Of a stretch of 44,032 bases of DNA, positions 6,748 to 36,670 are shown in pieces (within the stretch, counting starts at the first letter, position 1; each line of letters begins with the position of its first letter). This DNA is from Octopus bimaculoides (Eukaryota). The translations under genes were made by a program, and so were the position numbers. The notes under the pieces were generated by a model, which was not told the origin of the DNA, did not search any database, and saw only the letters and a program-made list of their open reading frames with translations. The stretch covers positions 53,141,303 to 53,185,334 of the forward strand of contig NC_068995.1 of assembly GCF_001194135.2 (NCBI RefSeq), given 5' to 3'.

Positions 6748-6793
<46 letters not shown>

Positions 6794-7000
6794 NNNNNNN
6801 NNNNNNNNNNNNNNNNNNNNNNNNNNNNNNNNNNNNNNNNNNNNNNNNNNNNNNNNNNNNNNNNNNNNNNNNNNNNNNNNNNNNNNNNNNNNNNNNNNNN
6901 NNNNNNNNNNNNNNNNNNNNNNNNNNNNNNNNNNNNNNNNNNNNNNNNNNNNNNNNNNNNNNNNNNNNNNNNNNNNNNNNNNNNNNNNNNNNNNNNNNNN

Positions 7001-7058
<58 letters not shown>
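6748..7058. repeat. (CT)n - gap N 6794-7000 - (GA)n
   Basis: Directly visible. Confidence 0.97.
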
Positions 7059-15856: not shown

Positions 15857-16312
15857 TACACACACATATGTGTGTGCATATATCTGTGCAGTTATGTGTG
15901 AGAATGTCTGCCTTCCGTTTGTATATTTGTGAGTGTTATTAATAACAGTGGGCGAGTATTATCCGTTGCGGATTTTTTTTTCAAGTTACCACCAGACAAG
16001 AAGTGCATAATAATTTCCAAGCTATACTTATCCACATACACAAAAATGTATCCGTGCATGTTTGTGTATGTGTGTCTGTATGTATGTATGTATGTTTTTG
16101 TATGTGGCCCTTTTCTTTCTTCGGTTCTTTTTTCTCCTCGACTTCCTCTTCCATTTCAACTCTCCGCCGCTTTCATGCTTCTTGTTTTCCGTCTCTTGCA
16201 TCGTCTCCATTTTATATTATATAATATGTAATCTTGTGTATGGAATCTAAGTGTTCACAACTCCTACTGTTATTGCGTGATCTTTCGTGATTTCAAAGCA
16301 TTAGCGCCAGTT

Positions 16313-17189
16313 NNNNNNNNNNNNNNNNNNNNNNNNNNNNNNNNNNNNNNNNNNNNNNNNNNNNNNNNNNNNNNNNNNNNNNNNNNNNNNNNNNNNNNNN
16401 NNNNNNNNNNNNNNNNNNNNNNNNNNNNNNNNNNNNNNNNNNNNNNNNNNNNNNNNNNNNNNNNNNNNNNNNNNNNNNNNNNNNNNNNNNNNNNNNNNNN
16501 NNNNNNNNNNNNNNNNNNNNNNNNNNNNNNNNNNNNNNNNNNNNNNNNNNNNNNNNNNNNNNNNNNNNNNNNNNNNNNNNNNNNNNNNNNNNNNNNNNNN
16601 NNNNNNNNNNNNNNNNNNNNNNNNNNNNNNNNNNNNNNNNNNNNNNNNNNNNNNNNNNNNNNNNNNNNNNNNNNNNNNNNNNNNNNNNNNNNNNNNNNNN
16701 NNNNNNNNNNNNNNNNNNNNNNNNNNNNNNNNNNNNNNNNNNNNNNNNNNNNNNNNNNNNNNNNNNNNNNNNNNNNNNNNNNNNNNNNNNNNNNNNNNNN
16801 NNNNNNNNNNNNNNNNNNNNNNNNNNNNNNNNNNNNNNNNNNNNNNNNNNNNNNNNNNNNNNNNNNNNNNNNNNNNNNNNNNNNNNNNNNNNNNNNNNNN
16901 NNNNNNNNNNNNNNNNNNNNNNNNNNNNNNNNNNNNNNNNNNNNNNNNNNNNNNNNNNNNNNNNNNNNNNNNNNNNNNNNNNNNNNNNNNNNNNNNNNNN
17001 NNNNNNNNNNNNNNNNNNNNNNNNNNNNNNNNNNNNNNNNNNNNNNNNNNNNNNNNNNNNNNNNNNNNNNNNNNNNNNNNNNNNNNNNNNNNNNNNNNNN
17101 NNNNNNNNNNNNNNNNNNNNNNNNNNNNNNNNNNNNNNNNNNNNNNNNNNNNNNNNNNNNNNNNNNNNNNNNNNNNNNNNNNNNNNNNN
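16313..17189. other. Assembly gap
   Basis: N run. Confidence 0.99.
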
Positions 17190-17204
17190 ATATATATATA
17201 TATA

Positions 17205-17325
17205 TATATAGCAGACGAACTTCAAGAGTTTCAGTCTATTAAATTTGTCCATGATGCTGCGCAGTGGGATTGAACACGAAACCGCGTGATTACAAAGACA
17301 ATTTTCTTAACCCAACAGCCATATC
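17205..17325 (-). mobile_element. Internally deleted SINE family C copy
   Basis: Tail GACGAACTTC..AGTTTC.GTCTA plus head GCGCAGTGGGATTGAAC...CTTAACCCAACAGCCAT. Confidence 0.65.
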
Positions 17326-21435: not shown

Positions 21436-22192
21436 TAGTAAAACAGGATTTTTGTGTCGTCTGCATAACAAACCAATACAACAATACAGGAGTTGTTTAA
21501 AGCCTATTACTTTCTTTATAGTCGCCATCTTTACATCTTTATTTTCGACGATTTATAATTGGCGGCACAACGAATATCAACGACAGGCCTTTCATATCAC
21601 CCTTTTGCTCGTATTCATCAGTTTTTTTTCTTTCATGACGTTCATCAATTATTTGTGAAACTTCTGGATCCTTCTCTACATATTCTTCAGTTATATTCTG
21701 TGCAATCCTATTCTTTACTTACATGTTCAAAGTCATGAAACAGTAGCATCATACACGATGAAAATCCAACAAACTCATCCGATGATATTTTTCTCTCTTC
21801 TGTCAATCTCTTCCCCTTACACATTATCCTTTTCGTTAAGACAATATACACACACACACTATACTTTGTTGAACGTATATCCATAATATTATGGCATCTT
21901 CCAGTTATTGTACATTCTGCTATTTTCATGTCGAAGCCGCTTTATGATAAATTTAAAATTATTTCCACTCACGTTTTCATTAATGCCTCCTCCCCCGGCG
22001 TCTCCTCCTTTTCATCCTCTCCTCCTATTTTCTCCATTCACGAATAATTATTTCAATGTTAACGGTAGTCCATACTCTCACTCAGATGCCTGGTTACTAT
22101 GTTGTTTAGCATACTCAAACAACCTTCAGCTTGTAACGAATTGTGTAGGGTCTGTCTTCTCTGTTGTCATTGTGTAGTGTTCGCAAAGCGGT

Positions 22193-22310
22193 GTTGTCAG
22201 CTGAATAACTCAGCTGACAGCTAACAAATGCTGTCTTTAATTTCGATTGACGCCATCGTAGCTGTCAGTCTCCAAACTGGCTTGAAAAATATCATTATTT
22301 TCGATTGGCC
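22193..22310. promoter_or_regulatory. Candidate cis-regulatory cluster: inverted TGACAG/CAGCTG pair, third CTGTCA, ATTGG box
   Basis: TGTCAGCTGA-ATAAC-TCAGCTGACA at 22195-22219, CTGTCA at 22262-22267, ATTGG at 22304-22308. Confidence 0.3.
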
Positions 22311-22639
22311 GCCAACCAAATAAAATGAACGACGCTCTGTGTTGCCGGGGCTGATAAAACACATGTAAAATGCTTACCAGCTAGCATCAACAGATTTTTA
22401 AAAAAACTAATAAATATAATTAATTAATCATATGTAATATATTAATTAGTTGTATATAATTAAGTAACATAATCGGATATATGTATTTCATGTGATTTGT
22501 GAAAATAAGTTTACATTAAAATATTGAGGGTCTGCTGGCGCACACACATATACACACGTACGCACACACACACACACGTTCGCGCATATATGTATATATG
22601 TATGTATATATATAATAATAATATAAATAATATATAGGT

Positions 22640-22642
22640 AGT

Positions 22643-22692
<50 letters not shown>
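22640..22692. repeat. (AGAT)n microsatellite
   Basis: Directly visible. Confidence 0.98.
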
Positions 22693-23009
22693 TCTCTTCA
22701 TTCTCTTCCCTTACTGGTGTCTTATTCGTTTCCTTTCTCATATCTTTTCTGCTCTCAGTTACATTCTTTAAGTGCAAATACTTTGCACAAGGATTAAGAG
22801 GTTAATCCTTTCTAGTCAATCAGTTCGAAATCGAAATCAAAGGATTATTGTTCTGTATTTATTTTACATGCCAAATCCCCGCCATTCCCATAGTATTACT
22901 GCTACTACAACATCTACTGCAACATTCACCAACGCAACAACCCACCGCCGTTACTCTTCTCCCCAAATACACCCACTAACAACTTTACCAATCAAAACTG
23001 TACTATCAC

Positions 23010-23056
23010 CACTACCTCTTCTACTACAACTACTACTACTGATGCTGCTGCTGCTG

Positions 23057-23091
<35 letters not shown>

Positions 23092-23130
23092 GCTACTGCT
23101 ACTTTTACCACCACCACAACCACCACCACA

Positions 23131-23191
<61 letters not shown>

Positions 23192-23205
23192 TTGCTGCTG
23201 CTGCT
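23010..23205. repeat. Compound (CTA)n/(CTG)n/(CCA)n microsatellite
   Basis: Directly visible; explains the poly-L and poly-S ORFs. Confidence 0.97.
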
Positions 23206-23239
23206 CAACAACACAACCACTACGACACACAGAGTAACC

Positions 23240-23346
23240 TCGAATCGTTAGCACTCCGGGCAAAATGTTAGCGGTATTTCGTCAGTCTTTACGTTCTGAG
23301 TTTAAATTCCACCGAAGTCGACTTTGCCTTTTCATCCTTTCGGAGT
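23240..23346 (+). mobile_element. SINE family A, 3'-truncated
   Basis: GAATCGTTAGCACTCCGGGCAAAATG.TAGCGGTATTTCGTC...CATCCTTTCGGAGTC. Confidence 0.88.
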
Positions 23347-23354
23347 CTGGTTTC

Positions 23355-23552
23355 ATTTTGCAGAAGGCCAGCAATTTTGGGAGAGGAGTGCAAGCCGATG
23401 ATATCGATTCCAGTGCTTAACTGCTACTCATTTCATCGGCCCCGAAAGAATGAAAGGCAGAGTCGACCTCGATGGAATTTGAACTCAGAAATAAAAATGG
23501 AGGAAATACCGCTAAGCATTTTCTCTGGCATGTTAACGATTTTTTCACTCGC
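23355..23552 (-). mobile_element. SINE family A copy, inverted relative to 23240-23346
   Basis: Family-A body and head on the - strand. Confidence 0.85.
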
Positions 23553-23559
23553 CATTTTG

Positions 23560-24135
23560 AATCTTTCCAATATTTCAGGCAAAATGTGTCGCTTGTTGGC
23601 CACGTAGCAGCTAACAGGCTAAGTAGGAGTTTATGGTTGTGCTGTATCGCCATGCTATTTGTCACCATCTTATTGTTTTTGCGTTTAGCTTAGATTTTAG
23701 AAGTTCAATATCTAATTCCTTCAGAGACTATCGCTGGTGCACTAGTCATCGATTTTCTAACTATGTACCATTATAATCAATATGTTACATAGCAGCTGCT
23801 CTTGATGCACTGGAAAGACAACTGGCAGCGTAGGTAACTGTCGTTTGAAACTATTCCACTGACACCAATAACCACCATCTTTTCTTGGTATGTTCAGTTG
23901 CTGGGTGTCTGAATTAACTTGTAATTTAATTAACATAGAATTAATGATGCTAAGAGTGACGTTTTCTAGTGGTACTGTCAATAAACTAGTTACTGTGCTT
24001 CACTCCAATACTACAGAATCACATATTATAACTGGCTTTTGTAAATGTGTTAATTATATTTGTGCTACAGAGATGAGTTTTAAACCATCTTTTTTTATGA
24101 CTGTTAAAATATTAATTTCTCTTTGGCAATCGCCC
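23560..24135 (-). pseudogene. Fossil C-terminal reverse-transcriptase region of an RLE-type non-LTR retrotransposon
   Basis: The - strand translation across frameshifts gives KEK..KTHLCSTNIINTF..PVI..LE*STVT..NSDTQQLNIPRKDGG..EQLL..HG. This parallels KEK..KTELNAKNKI..INT..PV..INWT..SD..RLYIPRKDGG..LL..HGKY of the same clade as the 17.4-18.0 kb fragment. ORF-track entry 23757-23981 is part of it. Confidence 0.65.
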
Positions 24136-24204
24136 AACAAATAGTTTTATTATCGATCGCACATACACAACGTATGCATTTTGTTTATTCGCCGAATTTA
24201 CTGC

Positions 24205-24540
24205 GGGATAGCACTTAGGGAGACTTCCTAATAACGCTGGGATCGAGCCCAAAGGTAGTAGGTATCGGTATTTCACCGTTATTGTGGATTATCAACACCA
24301 AGCACTGGTATCGAAGCGATGACGCATCGCCGTGGCACATCATCAAATAGTTTCCACACTACTTGTATACAGTCATAAACTGGGGATTCAATTCATCTTC
24401 AGTTCGAGCCAGATGCGACAATAATGGTGAAATATCGATATCCACCACACTTAGGTTTGATCCGAGGCGAGTTGTCTCACCTGGTCTATGACTTTCAGAT
24501 GTTTTAATACCCAGCGTTATTAGGGAGCCTAATAGTTCCT
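24205..24540 (+). other. Unique long fold-back element; candidate structured ncRNA or foldback transposon
   Basis: Nested helices: 24224-24241/24510-24527 (18 bp), 24242-24249/24454-24461 (8 bp), 24261-24285/24418-24442 (25 bp) and 24302-24315/24403-24416 (13 bp), plus apical hairpins. Confidence 0.6.
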
Positions 24541-25164
24541 GGTTGTTGTGTTTTAATGAGACAACCCAACAGAAAATAAGGTAACAGTCAATTACTTACG
24601 TCGATGAATTAACTACTTCACCATTTTTAGTATTCTTGTTTGTGGATATTCTCATTTTAAAAATCATCTCTGGCTATTCGTTGAGAGGACATTGGTGTTG
24701 CCTTGGCAGAGGTTTGTGCTCTCTGAGTAATCGATTTAACGCGCCCACCTCGAAATTGCTGGCTTTGTGTCAAAATTTGAAACCAGTTATTATTTATAGT
24801 AGCAACAGCAACAGTAGCAGTAGTAGTAGTAGTAGTCGCAGCAACAGCAGCAGCTACAACACTTATGATGCTATTTTTGGTTTGGTAATTATTCTAGTTA
24901 TCATTACGCTGTCCTCATCATCATCATCATCACCATCGTCATCATCATCATCACCGTCATCACCATCGCCCTCACCTTCAGCATTGTTCGACTTCGTCAT
25001 TGTCACACTGAATATTCGACAGTAAATATTACTCTTTTATGTATAAGATGACATTTCGTTTTTGACATTTATCCTTCATAATTCATTTAGTTAAGGGGTT
25101 GACTTGTCACTAATGCCCTAGGATTGGTACCAGTGTAGATTTCGGTATATACTTACCACACACA

Positions 25165-25652
25165 NNNNNNNNNNNNNNNNNNNNNNNNNNNNNNNNNNNN
25201 NNNNNNNNNNNNNNNNNNNNNNNNNNNNNNNNNNNNNNNNNNNNNNNNNNNNNNNNNNNNNNNNNNNNNNNNNNNNNNNNNNNNNNNNNNNNNNNNNNNN
25301 NNNNNNNNNNNNNNNNNNNNNNNNNNNNNNNNNNNNNNNNNNNNNNNNNNNNNNNNNNNNNNNNNNNNNNNNNNNNNNNNNNNNNNNNNNNNNNNNNNNN
25401 NNNNNNNNNNNNNNNNNNNNNNNNNNNNNNNNNNNNNNNNNNNNNNNNNNNNNNNNNNNNNNNNNNNNNNNNNNNNNNNNNNNNNNNNNNNNNNNNNNNN
25501 NNNNNNNNNNNNNNNNNNNNNNNNNNNNNNNNNNNNNNNNNNNNNNNNNNNNNNNNNNNNNNNNNNNNNNNNNNNNNNNNNNNNNNNNNNNNNNNNNNNN
25601 NNNNNNNNNNNNNNNNNNNNNNNNNNNNNNNNNNNNNNNNNNNNNNNNNNNN
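25165..25652. other. Assembly gap
   Basis: N run. Confidence 0.99.
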
Positions 25653-25788
25653 TAGGAAGTCAGCCATACACCCGTGTATATTTAATATACACCCGTGTAT
25701 ATTAACGAAAGAATATTTAATTACGGTAATCTACGAAGTGCAAAGAGGCTTGTGGCTGATCTACGTCGATAATGAATAGTTGCTAGCT

Positions 25789-25863
<75 letters not shown>
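25789..25863. repeat. (TAG)n microsatellite
   Basis: Directly visible. Confidence 0.99.
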
Positions 25864-25864
<1 letters not shown>

Positions 25865-25872
25865 CGTTACTG

Positions 25873-26088
25873 TTGTTGGCGGAATCGTTGGCGGAACCGT
25901 TGGCACTCCGGACGAAATGCTTAGCGGTATTTCGTCTGTCTTTACGTTCTGAGTTCAAATTCCGCCGAGGTCGACTTTGCCTTTCCTCCTTTCGAGGTCG
26001 ATAAATTAAGTACCAGTTACGTAATGGAGTCGATCTAATCGACTGACCCCCTCCCCCAAAATTTCGGGCCTTGGCCTAGAGAAGAATA
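25873..26088 (+). mobile_element. Near full-length SINE family A
   Basis: Head, B-box-like GAGTTCAAATTCC, body, and tail TTTCGGGCCTTGGCCTAGAGAAGAAT. Confidence 0.93.
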
Positions 26089-26099
26089 TTTCCAGGCTT

Positions 26100-26330
26100 T
26101 GCACTGTCTCATAATACATTCTCCTATAATTTCCACGAAGGTGCTGGTATGTAGTTGCTCGTTCTGCTAGAAATAGAAGCCGATATCTATCAAATCACAG
26201 CATTCATTCTTAAACACCATAGGTCGTATTAGATAATGCAGCAATGGTCACATTTGGAACGTCTTATCTTTCGTCACAGCTCTGCTCAGTTCTGCTTCAA
26301 TCACAACGGAACTGGAGCCAAACAACAATA
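26100..26330 (+). mobile_element. Interspersed repeat family E (unclassified, probably a SINE/LINE tail)
   Basis: The motif CTGCTAGAAATAGAAGCC..ATCT.TCAAATCACA recurs at ~33810 and ~41385. Confidence 0.55.
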
Positions 26331-26754
26331 ACAATAGAACCAGCAACATCAACTACGCATGCCTATTGCGAATAAGGTAAACAAGTTCAATTCTATCGCT
26401 AATATTATATATTATAATGGGATCTGACTTATATGGTTTGAAAGAATTTCGACCTTTCAATTGAACTAGACTGCTATAGAATAACATAATTAAAGCAATC
26501 TAAAAAAACTGAAATTTATCCATCTGCTCCTTCCCAAACCCAAACGATTATAGATAATTAGCAGATAAAAACAATACCTCGTGTTTTGACATTTACTTTT
26601 GCCATGACGCATTTATTCAAATTTCTTTATTTCGTTTCTTTTTTTTCCTTTGTTTTGTTTTTGTTTTTGATTTCCAATTTCTGACAAGCAGACGACACAG
26701 GAAAAAACTATGCTGCTGGTTGAAAATTCAAATAGGAAGGAGGGGAAAAAAGGA

Positions 26755-26766
26755 CTACTACTACTA

Positions 26767-26813
<47 letters not shown>
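26755..26813. repeat. (CTA)n-(CTG)n microsatellite
   Basis: Directly visible. Confidence 0.98.
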
Positions 26814-26815
<2 letters not shown>

Positions 26816-27404
26816 AAATAAGAAAGAGCAGGTTATTGATAAAACAAAGATAATATACGATTATCATTAACCTTTATGTTGCTAGCTAGAACTTCTCGAA
26901 AGTCCTATAAATTAATTTAGATTAATTCTCTTGAATTAAAGATTAATAAATGAGAGTCTACTAAACAAAGAGAATACTTAATAATAGAATTCACTATTGT
27001 CCAATGACCATATTGCAAGACACATGTTATGAACATCAACTCACTGTTTTCTTTATATTTCACCAGAAGATAACAGAAACGGCTTTAGAATCCTGTTTCT
27101 TATGACGCCGCCACGTGGAAAAAATCTTTAAAACAAAATAAACCTGGTCCGCCACCAATACCAAAGCATTGTCTTAGAAATAAGAATGATATTTATATAT
27201 TTATCAACCTTACTTTTTTCAACCAGAATTAATAATTTTGAAAGGTGTGAGTGAAATAATTTACATAAACATCAGAGATGCTGGAGAAACCCTGCATGTC
27301 TGAAACTATATATATAGCTTTAATTCACAAATAAAGAAATTCTATCCACCAACGTTGTGTTGAGCTCTCATTTTCATCGTTCGACATTTACGTGTGGTCT
27401 TTTA

Positions 27405-31958: not shown

Positions 31959-31993
<35 letters not shown>

Positions 31994-32364
31994 NNNNNNN
32001 NNNNNNNNNNNNNNNNNNNNNNNNNNNNNNNNNNNNNNNNNNNNNNNNNNNNNNNNNNNNNNNNNNNNNNNNNNNNNNNNNNNNNNNNNNNNNNNNNNNN
32101 NNNNNNNNNNNNNNNNNNNNNNNNNNNNNNNNNNNNNNNNNNNNNNNNNNNNNNNNNNNNNNNNNNNNNNNNNNNNNNNNNNNNNNNNNNNNNNNNNNNN
32201 NNNNNNNNNNNNNNNNNNNNNNNNNNNNNNNNNNNNNNNNNNNNNNNNNNNNNNNNNNNNNNNNNNNNNNNNNNNNNNNNNNNNNNNNNNNNNNNNNNNN
32301 NNNNNNNNNNNNNNNNNNNNNNNNNNNNNNNNNNNNNNNNNNNNNNNNNNNNNNNNNNNNNNNN
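31994..32364. other. Assembly gap
   Basis: N run. Confidence 0.99.
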
Positions 32365-32541
32365 GCTGCGTGGTGCTTCCCAACCACATGGCTCCGGGTT
32401 CAGTCTCATTGCGTGGCACCTTGGGCAACTGTCTTCTACTATGACTTCGGGCTGACCAAACCCTTGTGAGTGGATTTGATAGACGGAAACTGAAAAAAGC
32501 CTGTCGTATATATGTGTGTGTATGAGTGTGTGTGTGAGTGA

Positions 32542-36326: not shown

Positions 36327-36670
36327 NNNNNNNNNNNNNNNNNNNNNNNNNNNNNNNNNNNNNNNNNNNNNNNNNNNNNNNNNNNNNNNNNNNNNNNNNN
36401 NNNNNNNNNNNNNNNNNNNNNNNNNNNNNNNNNNNNNNNNNNNNNNNNNNNNNNNNNNNNNNNNNNNNNNNNNNNNNNNNNNNNNNNNNNNNNNNNNNNN
36501 NNNNNNNNNNNNNNNNNNNNNNNNNNNNNNNNNNNNNNNNNNNNNNNNNNNNNNNNNNNNNNNNNNNNNNNNNNNNNNNNNNNNNNNNNNNNNNNNNNNN
36601 NNNNNNNNNNNNNNNNNNNNNNNNNNNNNNNNNNNNNNNNNNNNNNNNNNNNNNNNNNNNNNNNNNNNNN
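36327..36670. other. Assembly gap
   Basis: N run. Confidence 0.99.

What the first reader, a model, noticed from the sequence alone, without database searches (positions are those of the whole stretch)
24205..24555. Unexplained ~335-nt fold-back with strand-asymmetric G-U pairing: candidate novel structured RNA
Seen: a nested rod of helices. These are S1 24224-24241/24510-24527 (18 bp, 1 G-U), S2 24242-24249/24454-24461 (8 bp, 2 G-U), S3 24261-24285/24418-24442 (25 contiguous bp, 3 G-U, no mismatch) and S4 24302-24315/24403-24416 (13 bp, 1 G-U). The rod is capped by a multibranch of three hairpins: GCGATG/CATCGC 24316-24330, GTGG/CCAC, and CTGGGGAT/ATCTTCAG 24380-24402. A two-hairpin side branch lies at 24464-24498, and weaker pairing extends to 24205/24539. 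About ten deviations from Watson-Crick pairing are G-U on the + strand and would be A-C mismatches on the - strand, which is what selection on RNA structure gives rather than random decay of a DNA TIR. It matches none of the SINE families here, and I see no 7SL, 7SK, RNase P/MRP, U3, telomerase-template or canonical hammerhead motif. T4 runs occur at 24502 and 24551, and each arm has a B-box-like word (GGTTTGATCC 24454 on +; GGGCTCGATCC on -). Inference, several alternatives: a new ncRNA or structured retro-element family; an ADAR/Dicer substrate; a retro-copied A-to-I-edited duplex (all five G-U pairs in S2 and S3 have G on the 5' arm, although the neighbouring bases are not ADAR-preferred); or a foldback MITE or head-to-head SINE fusion.
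Basis: partly seen in the sequence, partly recalled or inferred. Interest (0 to 1): 0.75.

Follow-up and report, generated by a model that had tools for sequence, protein, structure and literature searches.

The report
Decaying inverted pair of dispersed repeats
The long hairpin is real, but it is two copies of an ordinary dispersed repeat lying head-to-head and eroding, with no sign of being a selected or transcribed structured RNA.

Summary
The nested helices exist and fold far better than shuffled sequence (z about -7.7). The minus strand folds equally well, and the claimed excess of G-U pairs disappears on a fair count: the arm-to-arm alignment has 6 G-U-type and 5 A-C-type transitions.

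Both arms belong to a dispersed repeat family. Its best-kept segment has about 100-160 copies at 80% identity or more. The unit is at least 280 nt (24324..24530 followed by the reverse complement of 24220..24148), and paralogous contigs carry it as a solo unit, not as a fold-back. The "multibranch cap" is the 5' part of the right copy, which has no partner. The "side branch" is what a ~47-nt deletion in the left arm leaves unpaired; three sister species do not have that deletion.

Across the four related species there are no compensatory changes. Seven substitutions break predicted pairs, and the element diverges faster than its flank (about 8% against 3%). Rfam and ARAGORN find nothing. No RNA read at 90% identity or more lies on the stretch laid (23950-24640).

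Verdict: a neutral inverted repeat derived from a transposable element. Interest is low.

The parts
24324..24530 (+). 24418-24530 is the right arm of the inverted repeat. The copy is cut short at about 24530 in this species.
   Evidence: A single-copy-depth paralogous contig of the same species (515 nt) is collinear with 24324-24477 and then with the reverse complement of 24241-24151. Depth is 7-12x single copy at 24334-24405 and rises to about 160x at 24478-24501. Contigs of species B, D and E run on 176-389 nt past 24527-24530 without matching the window.
24148..24315 (-). Left copy of U in the opposite orientation. It is 5'-truncated relative to the right copy and carries a ~47-nt internal deletion at 24241/24242. 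Its outer part (24148-24220) corresponds to the stretch of U that the right copy has lost.
   Evidence: Inverted repeat pairs. Multi-copy depth of 14-25x at 24142-24213. The family's loose-end consensus behind 24527 (TCGTCCCCAAAGCGCTATACC...) resembles the reverse complement of 24222-24195. Orthologous contigs of B, D and E carry 40-52 extra nt at this junction. In B and E these were laid as the reverse complement of 24454-24524 and 24420-24494.
24221..24285 (.). Left arm of the inverted repeat (helices S1-S3, 5' side).
24418..24530 (.). Right arm of the inverted repeat (helices S1-S3, 3' side), including the unpaired insert 24467-24509.
   Evidence: Many contigs of five species match 24418-24527 alone at 80-91% identity, on either strand.
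24467..24509 (+). It is the part of the right arm left without a partner by the deletion in the left arm, and it is the best-kept, most abundant core of the family.
   Evidence: Microhomology CTGGG/CTCGG at the deletion junction. Depth about 100-160x single copy at 80% identity in species A and 18-92x at 90% identity in species B-E. The partner segment is present in the left arm of B, D and E.
24316..24402 (+). It is the 5' portion of the right copy that has no counterpart in the truncated left copy. Its hairpins are not conserved.
   Evidence: In species D and E, 24385 G>C and 24396 T>G break two of the pairs of hairpin 24380-24402. In B and D, 24316 G>C breaks the closing pair of GCGATG/CATCGC.

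Best explanation
The fold-back is a head-to-head inverted pair of two copies of one dispersed repeat family, specific to this locus. The family is presumably a non-autonomous transposable element with a unit of at least 280 nt. The right copy (+, 24324-24530) keeps its 5' part. The left copy (-, 24315-24148) is 5'-truncated. Wherever both copies cover the same part of the unit they are complementary on one strand, so any transcript or single strand folds into a long imperfect rod.

The pair predates the split of the five sampled species and has been eroding neutrally since. The erosion consists of transitions in both directions, a ~47-nt microhomology deletion in the left arm, and loss of at least 170 nt from the outer end of the right copy, both deletions being in this species. 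The G-U pairs, the 'side branch' and the 'cap' are by-products of that erosion and of the unequal length of the two copies. They are not features shaped by selection on an RNA.

Shown: the arms are multi-copy, the paralogues are solo units, there is no strand asymmetry and no covariation, the indels are lineage-specific, and no RNA reads lie on the stretch laid (23950-24640). Inferred: that the family is a mobile element, and that the pair arose by two nearby insertions or by one inverted duplication. These data cannot separate those two origins.
For: - Both strands fold equally well against shuffles (z -7.65 and -7.71).
- Transition mismatches between the arms split 6 G-U-type to 5 A-C-type. 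The energy difference between strands lies inside the null of simulated symmetric decay.
- Raw genomic reads at about 0.7x give depth 0-1.5 in the flanks, 12-16 at 24142-24213 and up to 97 at 24478-24501. Contig depth gives 14-25x and about 160x single copy for the same segments.
- A paralogous contig carries [24324-24477] + ~36 nt + reverse complement of [24241-24151] as one solo unit. Other paralogous contigs of 430-1279 nt hold a single arm-like piece with 150-360 nt of flank on both sides and no inverted partner.
- Orthologous contigs of species B, D and E keep 40-52 nt in the left arm that the window lacks, and continue past 24530 with sequence absent from the window.
- Of 22 variable orthologous sites, 9 are unpaired, 7 break a predicted pair, 3 are one-sided and 3 are Watson-Crick in the relatives where the window has G-U. 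None is compensatory.
- Divergence between species A and D is 24/291 in the element and 21/637 in the flank.
- There is no Rfam match at E<=10 locally or at gathering score window-wide, and no tRNA.
- No RNA read at 90% identity or more lies on 23950-24640 in three RNA-seq runs. None of 15 RNA-seq assemblies holds any of the 37 sampled words.
Against: - The family has only about 150 recognisable copies. Two independent insertions landing head-to-head, 8-130 nt apart, would therefore be improbable unless the family is much larger at lower identity, insertion is locally biased, or a single inverted duplication made the pair.
- The termini of the unit, target-site duplications and the class of the element could not be established, because no genome assembly or repeat library was available.
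- Short-read contigs break at near-identical inverted repeats, so younger fold-back copies of the family could have been missed.
- Only about 6% of each RNA run was sampled, and no small-RNA or tissue-diverse data could be examined. Low or tissue-specific transcription is not excluded.
- The element diverges faster than its flanks, and this is not explained.
Confidence: 0.8

Rival explanations
1. A foldback or MITE-type DNA transposon. In this reading the inverted repeat is intrinsic to one mobile element with long terminal inverted repeats, and the 'solo' paralogues are half-elements or artefacts of contig breaks.
For: Long inverted arms existed in the common ancestor: at least about 185 nt once the segments kept in species B, D and E are added. 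The low copy number makes chance adjacency of two insertions unlikely. Several arm-only contigs end exactly at the arm, as expected if assembly breaks there.
Against: A single-copy paralogous contig holds the complete unit in one orientation, with 75 nt before and 144 nt after it and no inverted partner. Several other contigs have a single arm with 150-360 nt on each side. The two copies are unequal: the right one has about 80 nt of 5' sequence that the left lacks. The family continues beyond the outer end of the left arm with a conserved consensus, so that end is not a terminus (loose ends before 24149, agreement 0.7-0.75). Most copies have a different conserved sequence upstream of 24418.
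Confidence: 0.1
2. A functional structured RNA. This could be a novel ncRNA or ribozyme-bearing retroelement, or a hairpin kept as a source of endo-siRNA or as an ADAR substrate.
For: The fold is very stable (z about -7.7). The fold-back is retained in at least four related species. Nearby inverted repeats are the usual dsRNA substrates of A-to-I editing in metazoans, octopus included in the survey (PMC9989829). Paralogues of the family do appear in RNA-seq at under 90-95% identity.
Against: There is no strand preference. There are no compensatory changes and 7 pair-breaking substitutions. Indels of 47 nt and at least 170 nt separate sister species. Divergence is higher than in the flank. There is no Rfam hit, hammerhead families included. 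No RNA read at 90% identity or more lies on the stretch laid, and none of the sampled words occurs in 15 RNA assemblies. Retention in species only about 3% diverged needs no selection.
Confidence: 0.04
3. A retro-copied duplex that had been A-to-I edited. The G residues of the 5' arm would record inosines fixed by reverse transcription.
For: All five G-U pairs of S2 and S3 have the G on the 5' arm. At three of them (24247, 24262, 24268) no family variant is listed at the partner position, so the family appears to agree with the right arm's T and the left arm appears to carry the A-to-G difference.
Against: 24278 is A in species B, C and D, so that G arose in the genome after the species split. 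At 24458 the family and species B have C, so that G-U pair comes from C>T at a CpG on the other arm. The same left arm has three G-to-A-type differences (24253, 24257, 24260) and one at 24250, which balance the A-to-G ones.
Confidence: 0.01

Closest known systems
Inverted pairs of SINEs or other repeats that form intramolecular dsRNA (for example primate IRAlus; repeat-derived dsRNA as the main A-to-I editing substrate across metazoans, PMC9989829)
   Same: Two copies of one dispersed repeat lie in opposite orientation within a few hundred nucleotides. They would give a ~100-bp imperfect duplex in any transcript that spans them. Mismatches are mainly transitions from independent decay of the two copies.
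   Different: This locus shows no transcription in the sampled RNA-seq, so no editing could be assessed. The family is low-copy (about 150 recognisable copies), not a dominant SINE. The copies abut head-to-head rather than lying in separate positions of an intron or UTR.
MITEs and Foldback (FB) DNA transposons
   Same: A non-coding repeat of a few hundred nt that folds into a long hairpin through inverted arms.
   Different: Other members of the family are found as single-orientation units. The arms are unequal in extent. The outer end of the left arm is not a family terminus. No target-site duplication could be identified.
5'-inverted insertions of non-LTR retrotransposons by twin priming, and head-to-head arrays of Penelope-like elements (from my own knowledge, not tested against a library)
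   Same: A junction between two oppositely oriented, 5'-truncated pieces of one retroelement family.
   Different: In twin priming the inverted piece covers the part of the element upstream of the direct piece, with little overlap. Here both pieces cover the same 3'-ward part of the unit. No hammerhead motif of the Penelope type was found, and no reverse-transcriptase or other coding signal.

Membership tests
Structured non-coding RNA gene (any Rfam family or a new one) | Match to a curated covariance model | tested here: not met
   cmscan of 23500-25300 at E<=10 gave only weak, unrelated snoRNA and miRNA hits outside the rod. The whole window at gathering score gave 0 hits.
Structured non-coding RNA gene (any Rfam family or a new one) | Base pairs kept by compensatory changes among orthologues | tested here: not met
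   There are 22 variable sites in four related species. None is a double compensatory change and 7 break pairs. Large indels fall in one arm. The substitution lists were incomplete in the multi-copy segment.
Structured non-coding RNA gene (any Rfam family or a new one) | One strand favoured (G-U against A-C, folding energy) | tested here: not met
   Transitions split 6 to 5. z is -7.65 on + and -7.71 on -. The energy difference lies within the simulated null.
Structured non-coding RNA gene (any Rfam family or a new one) | Transcribed as a discrete RNA | tested here: not met
   No reads at 90% identity or more lie on 23950-24640 in 3 RNA-seq runs (about 6% of each sampled). The share of sampled words is 0.00 in 15 RNA assemblies. 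No small-RNA libraries were available.
MITE / Foldback DNA transposon | Terminal inverted repeats | tested here: inconclusive
   Long inverted arms are present. However, the family continues beyond the left arm's outer end, so the arms are not shown to be terminal.
MITE / Foldback DNA transposon | Other family members carry both arms | tested here: not met
   Paralogous contigs carry a single-orientation unit or a single arm with long flanks. Caveat: short-read contigs can break at young inverted repeats.
MITE / Foldback DNA transposon | Target-site duplication flanking the element | not testable with these tools
   The right outer end is deleted in this species, and the sequences of the orthologous contigs are not returned by the tools.
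tRNA-derived SINE | tRNA-like head with A and B boxes | tested here: inconclusive
   ARAGORN finds no tRNA and Rfam finds no tRNA hit at E<=10. About half of the family contigs read GGTTCGATCC at 24454-24463, which is B-box-like. No convincing A box is seen, and more diverged copies read GGATTG or GGAATTG at that place.
tRNA-derived SINE | Defined 5' end and a simple-repeat or A-rich 3' tail | tested here: inconclusive
   Loose ends before 24418 and before 24149 show conserved consensus sequences rather than random flanks, so neither point is a terminus. The true ends were not reached.
Inverted repeat pair of dispersed elements (IRAlu-like) | Two copies of one family, in opposite orientation, close together | tested here: met
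   both arms belong to one multi-copy family, and the unit is defined by a solo paralogue.
Inverted repeat pair of dispersed elements (IRAlu-like) | Embedded in a transcript and A-to-I edited | tested here: not met
   No locus-specific RNA reads were found, so editing cannot be assessed.
Hammerhead-bearing retroelement (Penelope-like element or retrozyme) | Hammerhead ribozyme motif | tested here: not met
   No hammerhead family of Rfam matches at E<=10 on either strand.

The most novel reading that the evidence does not exclude
The most novel reading still open concerns the repeat family rather than the hairpin. The family may be an undescribed octopod non-autonomous retroelement whose ~65-nt core (24461-24527) is kept at 90% identity or more in 18-92 copies per species (B-E) while the rest of the unit drifts, like the conserved central domains of some SINE superfamilies. 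In that case this ancient head-to-head pair could act as a dsRNA source (ADAR or siRNA substrate) in a tissue not sampled here.
Probability: 0.1. Interest if true: 0.3.

Novelty: new member of a known kind. Interest (0 to 1): 0.1.

Why it matters
It matters mainly as a caution. In repeat-rich genomes such as those of cephalopods, long and very stable hairpins arise routinely from inverted repeat copies. Counting G-U pairs only inside the helices one has drawn hides the A-C mismatches, which get labelled as loops, and so creates a false impression of selection at the RNA level. The locus adds nothing new mechanistically. If it were transcribed it would simply be one more repeat-derived dsRNA of the kind ADAR enzymes act on.

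Tried and rejected
- **Rfam.** Local permissive and whole-window gathering scans found nothing relevant.
- **ARAGORN.** No tRNA or tmRNA in the window.
- **Second copy in the window.** blastn with word size 7 found none.
- **Metagenome scan.** A 19-mer from the family core gave 13 loci, but only the seed itself matched, which is about the number expected by chance. This was a dead end.
- **Small-RNA libraries.** None could be listed.
- **RNA reads over 21600-27400 for gene context.** The wider transcriptional context is therefore unknown.
- **Coding potential.** Open frames of 42-58 codons run through both arms (shared peptide VKYRY..LG.I), but Pfam finds nothing. A frequent 1-nt deletion at 24483 in family members argues against coding constraint. 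I ran no further search on it.
- **Window-wide inverted-repeat census.** It was swamped by microsatellites and N gaps and was uninformative.
- **Outer concentric inverted repeats.** 24068-24084/24656-24672 and 24098-24126/24565-24590 have E = 0.017 and 0.87. The first has its right arm inside an unrelated abundant SINE. I treat both as chance.

Full report
**1. The observation.**
They are 24237-24285/24418-24466 (49 nt, 78% complementary) and 24221-24241/24510-24530 (21 nt, 90%). Folding 24205-24555 as RNA gives -133.8 kcal/mol, against -88.3 +/- 6.0 for dinucleotide shuffles (z = -7.65). The MFE reproduces S1-S4, the three cap hairpins and the side branch. The structure is therefore real and far beyond chance. 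No other copy lies in the 44-kb window.

**2. The strand asymmetry is not real.**
- The reverse strand folds at -123.5 kcal/mol with z = -7.71.
- I aligned the left arm to the reverse complement of the right arm without gaps. The long block has 38 Watson-Crick positions, 5 that are G-U on +, 4 that are A-C on + (G-U on -) and 2 transversions. The outer block adds one of each transition type. The total is 6 against 5.
- The four A-C sites (24250, 24253, 24257, 24260) cluster between S2 and S3. In the minus-strand MFE they are G-U pairs.
- Over the whole MFE there are 18 G-U of 126 pairs on + and 13 of 120 on -.
- I simulated strand-symmetric decay: a perfect version of the arms, 11 random transitions and 2 transversions, 400 replicates. 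The null for the energy difference between strands has mean -0.8 and sd 10.4 kcal/mol. The observed -10.3 is reached or exceeded in 19.5% of replicates.

**3. The arms are copies of a dispersed repeat.**
Raw genomic reads of the same species (about 0.7x sampled, 80% identity or more) give these depths:
- 0-1.5 in the flanks;
- 12-16 at 24142-24213;
- 1-4 at 24238-24405;
- a rise from 10 to 97 across 24406-24501.

Contig depths in four runs of the same species agree, relative to single copy:
- about 14-25x at 24142-24213;
- 7-12x at 24334-24405;
- about 160x at 24478-24501.

Four related species show the same profile. Many contigs match 24418-24527 alone at 80-91% identity, in either orientation.

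One contig of the same species is decisive. It is 515 nt long, at single-copy depth, and was recovered in all four runs. It is collinear with 24324-24477, then about 36 diverged nt, then the reverse complement of 24241-24151. So the family unit runs 24324..24530 and continues as the reverse complement of 24220..24148. It is at least 280 nt long, and in that paralogue it stands alone, not as a fold-back.

The loose-end consensus behind 24527 (TCGTCCCCAAAGCGCTATACC...) resembles the reverse complement of the window's 24222-24195, which confirms the continuity. The family also continues beyond 24149 with a conserved consensus. Most copies have a different conserved sequence upstream of 24418. The true ends were therefore not reached, and the family is mosaic.

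**4. Re-reading the anatomy.**
- The right copy (+) is 24324-24530.
- The left copy (-) is 24315-24148 and is 5'-truncated.
- The "multibranch cap" (24316-24402) is the 5' part of the right copy, which has no partner in the shorter left copy.
- The "two-hairpin side branch" (24464-24498, within 24467-24509) has no partner because the left arm carries a deletion at 24241/24242, between the short direct repeats CTGGG and CTCGG.

**5. Orthologues.**
Contigs at single-copy depth from species B, D and E span the left flank and the element.
- In B, 71 nt laid as the reverse complement of 24454-24524 sit between 24226 and 24248.
- In E, 75 nt laid as the reverse complement of 24420-24494 sit between 24241 and 24293.
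- In D, 47 unaligned nt sit exactly at 24240/24241.

The left-arm deletion is therefore specific to the species of the window. The contigs of B, D and E also continue 176-389 nt past 24527-24530 without matching the window. In E, 211 nt replace 24529-24567. So the window has also lost the outer part of the right copy. The ancestral fold-back was longer and more regular, with arms of at least about 185 nt, and it has been eroding.

Of 22 variable orthologous sites that could be read:
- 9 are unpaired in the MFE;
- 7 break a pair (24316, 24385, 24396, 24412, 24428, 24448, 24466);
- 3 are one-sided changes that keep pairing;
- 3 are sites where the relatives have a Watson-Crick pair and the window has G-U (24278, 24408, 24458);
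- none is compensatory.

Divergence between species A and D is 24/291 (8.2%) in 24240-24530, against 21/637 (3.3%) in the left flank. Nothing here suggests purifying selection on a structure.

**6. The edited-duplex idea.**
- 24278 is A in species B, C and D, so that G arose in the genome after the species split.
- 24458 is C in species B and in about half of the family contigs, so that G-U pair comes from CpG decay on the right arm.
- The remaining left-arm A-to-G-type differences (24247, 24262, 24268) are balanced by G-to-A-type differences (24253, 24257, 24260).

**7. Expression and known families.**
- No RNA-seq read at 90% identity or more lies on 23950-24640 in three runs. The 31 reads laid are at lower identity, share variants, and come from paralogues.
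- Fifteen RNA-seq assemblies of the species hold none of the 37 sampled words.
- No small-RNA library could be listed.
- Rfam gives no relevant match, locally at E<=10 or window-wide at gathering score, and ARAGORN finds no tRNA.
- Translated fragments of the arms hit nothing in Pfam.
- The window has no convincing coding ORF. It is full of microsatellites and assembly gaps.

**8. Interpretation.**
The best explanation, at about 0.8, is a neutral, decaying, head-to-head pair of two copies of a dispersed and probably mobile repeat. These data do not say whether two insertions or one inverted duplication produced it. The modest copy number makes chance adjacency somewhat surprising.

The main rival is an intrinsic foldback or MITE element, at about 0.1. 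The solo paralogues, the unequal copies and the non-terminal arm ends disfavour it, but only a whole-genome census would settle it. A selected structured RNA is unlikely, at about 0.04.

Functionally, the closest analogue is an inverted repeat pair of the IRAlu kind. Nearby inverted repeats are the usual dsRNA substrates of A-to-I editing across metazoans (PMC9989829). This locus shows no transcription, so that remains a potential property, not a demonstrated one.

**9. Verdict.**
The structure is real and its origin is ordinary. The interesting claim, strand-specific G-U selection, came from counting only inside the drawn helices. Interest is about 0.1.

Noticed in passing
window 24645-24785: An extremely abundant SINE-like repeat lies just right of the element. 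Summed contig word depth is 2e5-1e6, against 10-55 for single-copy sequence, in all four related species. Copies share break points at 24728/24748/24785 and a conserved upstream consensus (...GGGGTCGATGTAATCGACTTACCCCCTC). It is unrelated in sequence to the fold-back.
   Followed up: partly
window 24461-24527: A ~65-nt core of the repeat family is kept at 90% identity or more in 18-92 copies per species, while the adjacent parts of the unit have only 3-9 copies at that identity. This is reminiscent of conserved central domains of SINE superfamilies. A 1-nt deletion at 24483 is common among copies.
   Followed up: partly
window 24100-24241 versus 24240-24530: Divergence between species is uneven. 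There are 0-2 differences in 142 nt just left of and inside the outer left arm. There are 5-8% in the rest of the element, including its low-copy interior (12/132 for species D), against about 3% in the wider flanks. Several species D/E states equal the states seen in paralogues, so part of the excess is G>A change in the lineage of the window. Gene conversion with paralogues or chimeric contigs could also contribute. This is unexplained.
   Followed up: partly
window 24166-24213 and 24406-24501 (paralogues): RNA-seq reads at under 90% identity, all sharing the same variant set (for example in run X25), show that at least one paralogous copy of the family is transcribed somewhere in the genome, mostly from one strand.
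   Followed up: no
window 24788-24983, 23021-23191 and many others: The window is dense in di-, tri- and tetranucleotide microsatellites (103 TRF rows) and holds 3,097 N in several assembly gaps, for example within about 1430-2275, 6750-7050, 16310-17210, 25125-25650, 31990-32380 and 36330-36660.
   Followed up: no
window 24068-24084 / 24656-24672: A 17-nt, 94% complementary inverted pair lies roughly concentric with the fold-back (E = 0.017 in the local search). Its right arm lies inside the unrelated abundant SINE, so it is probably chance.
   Followed up: partly
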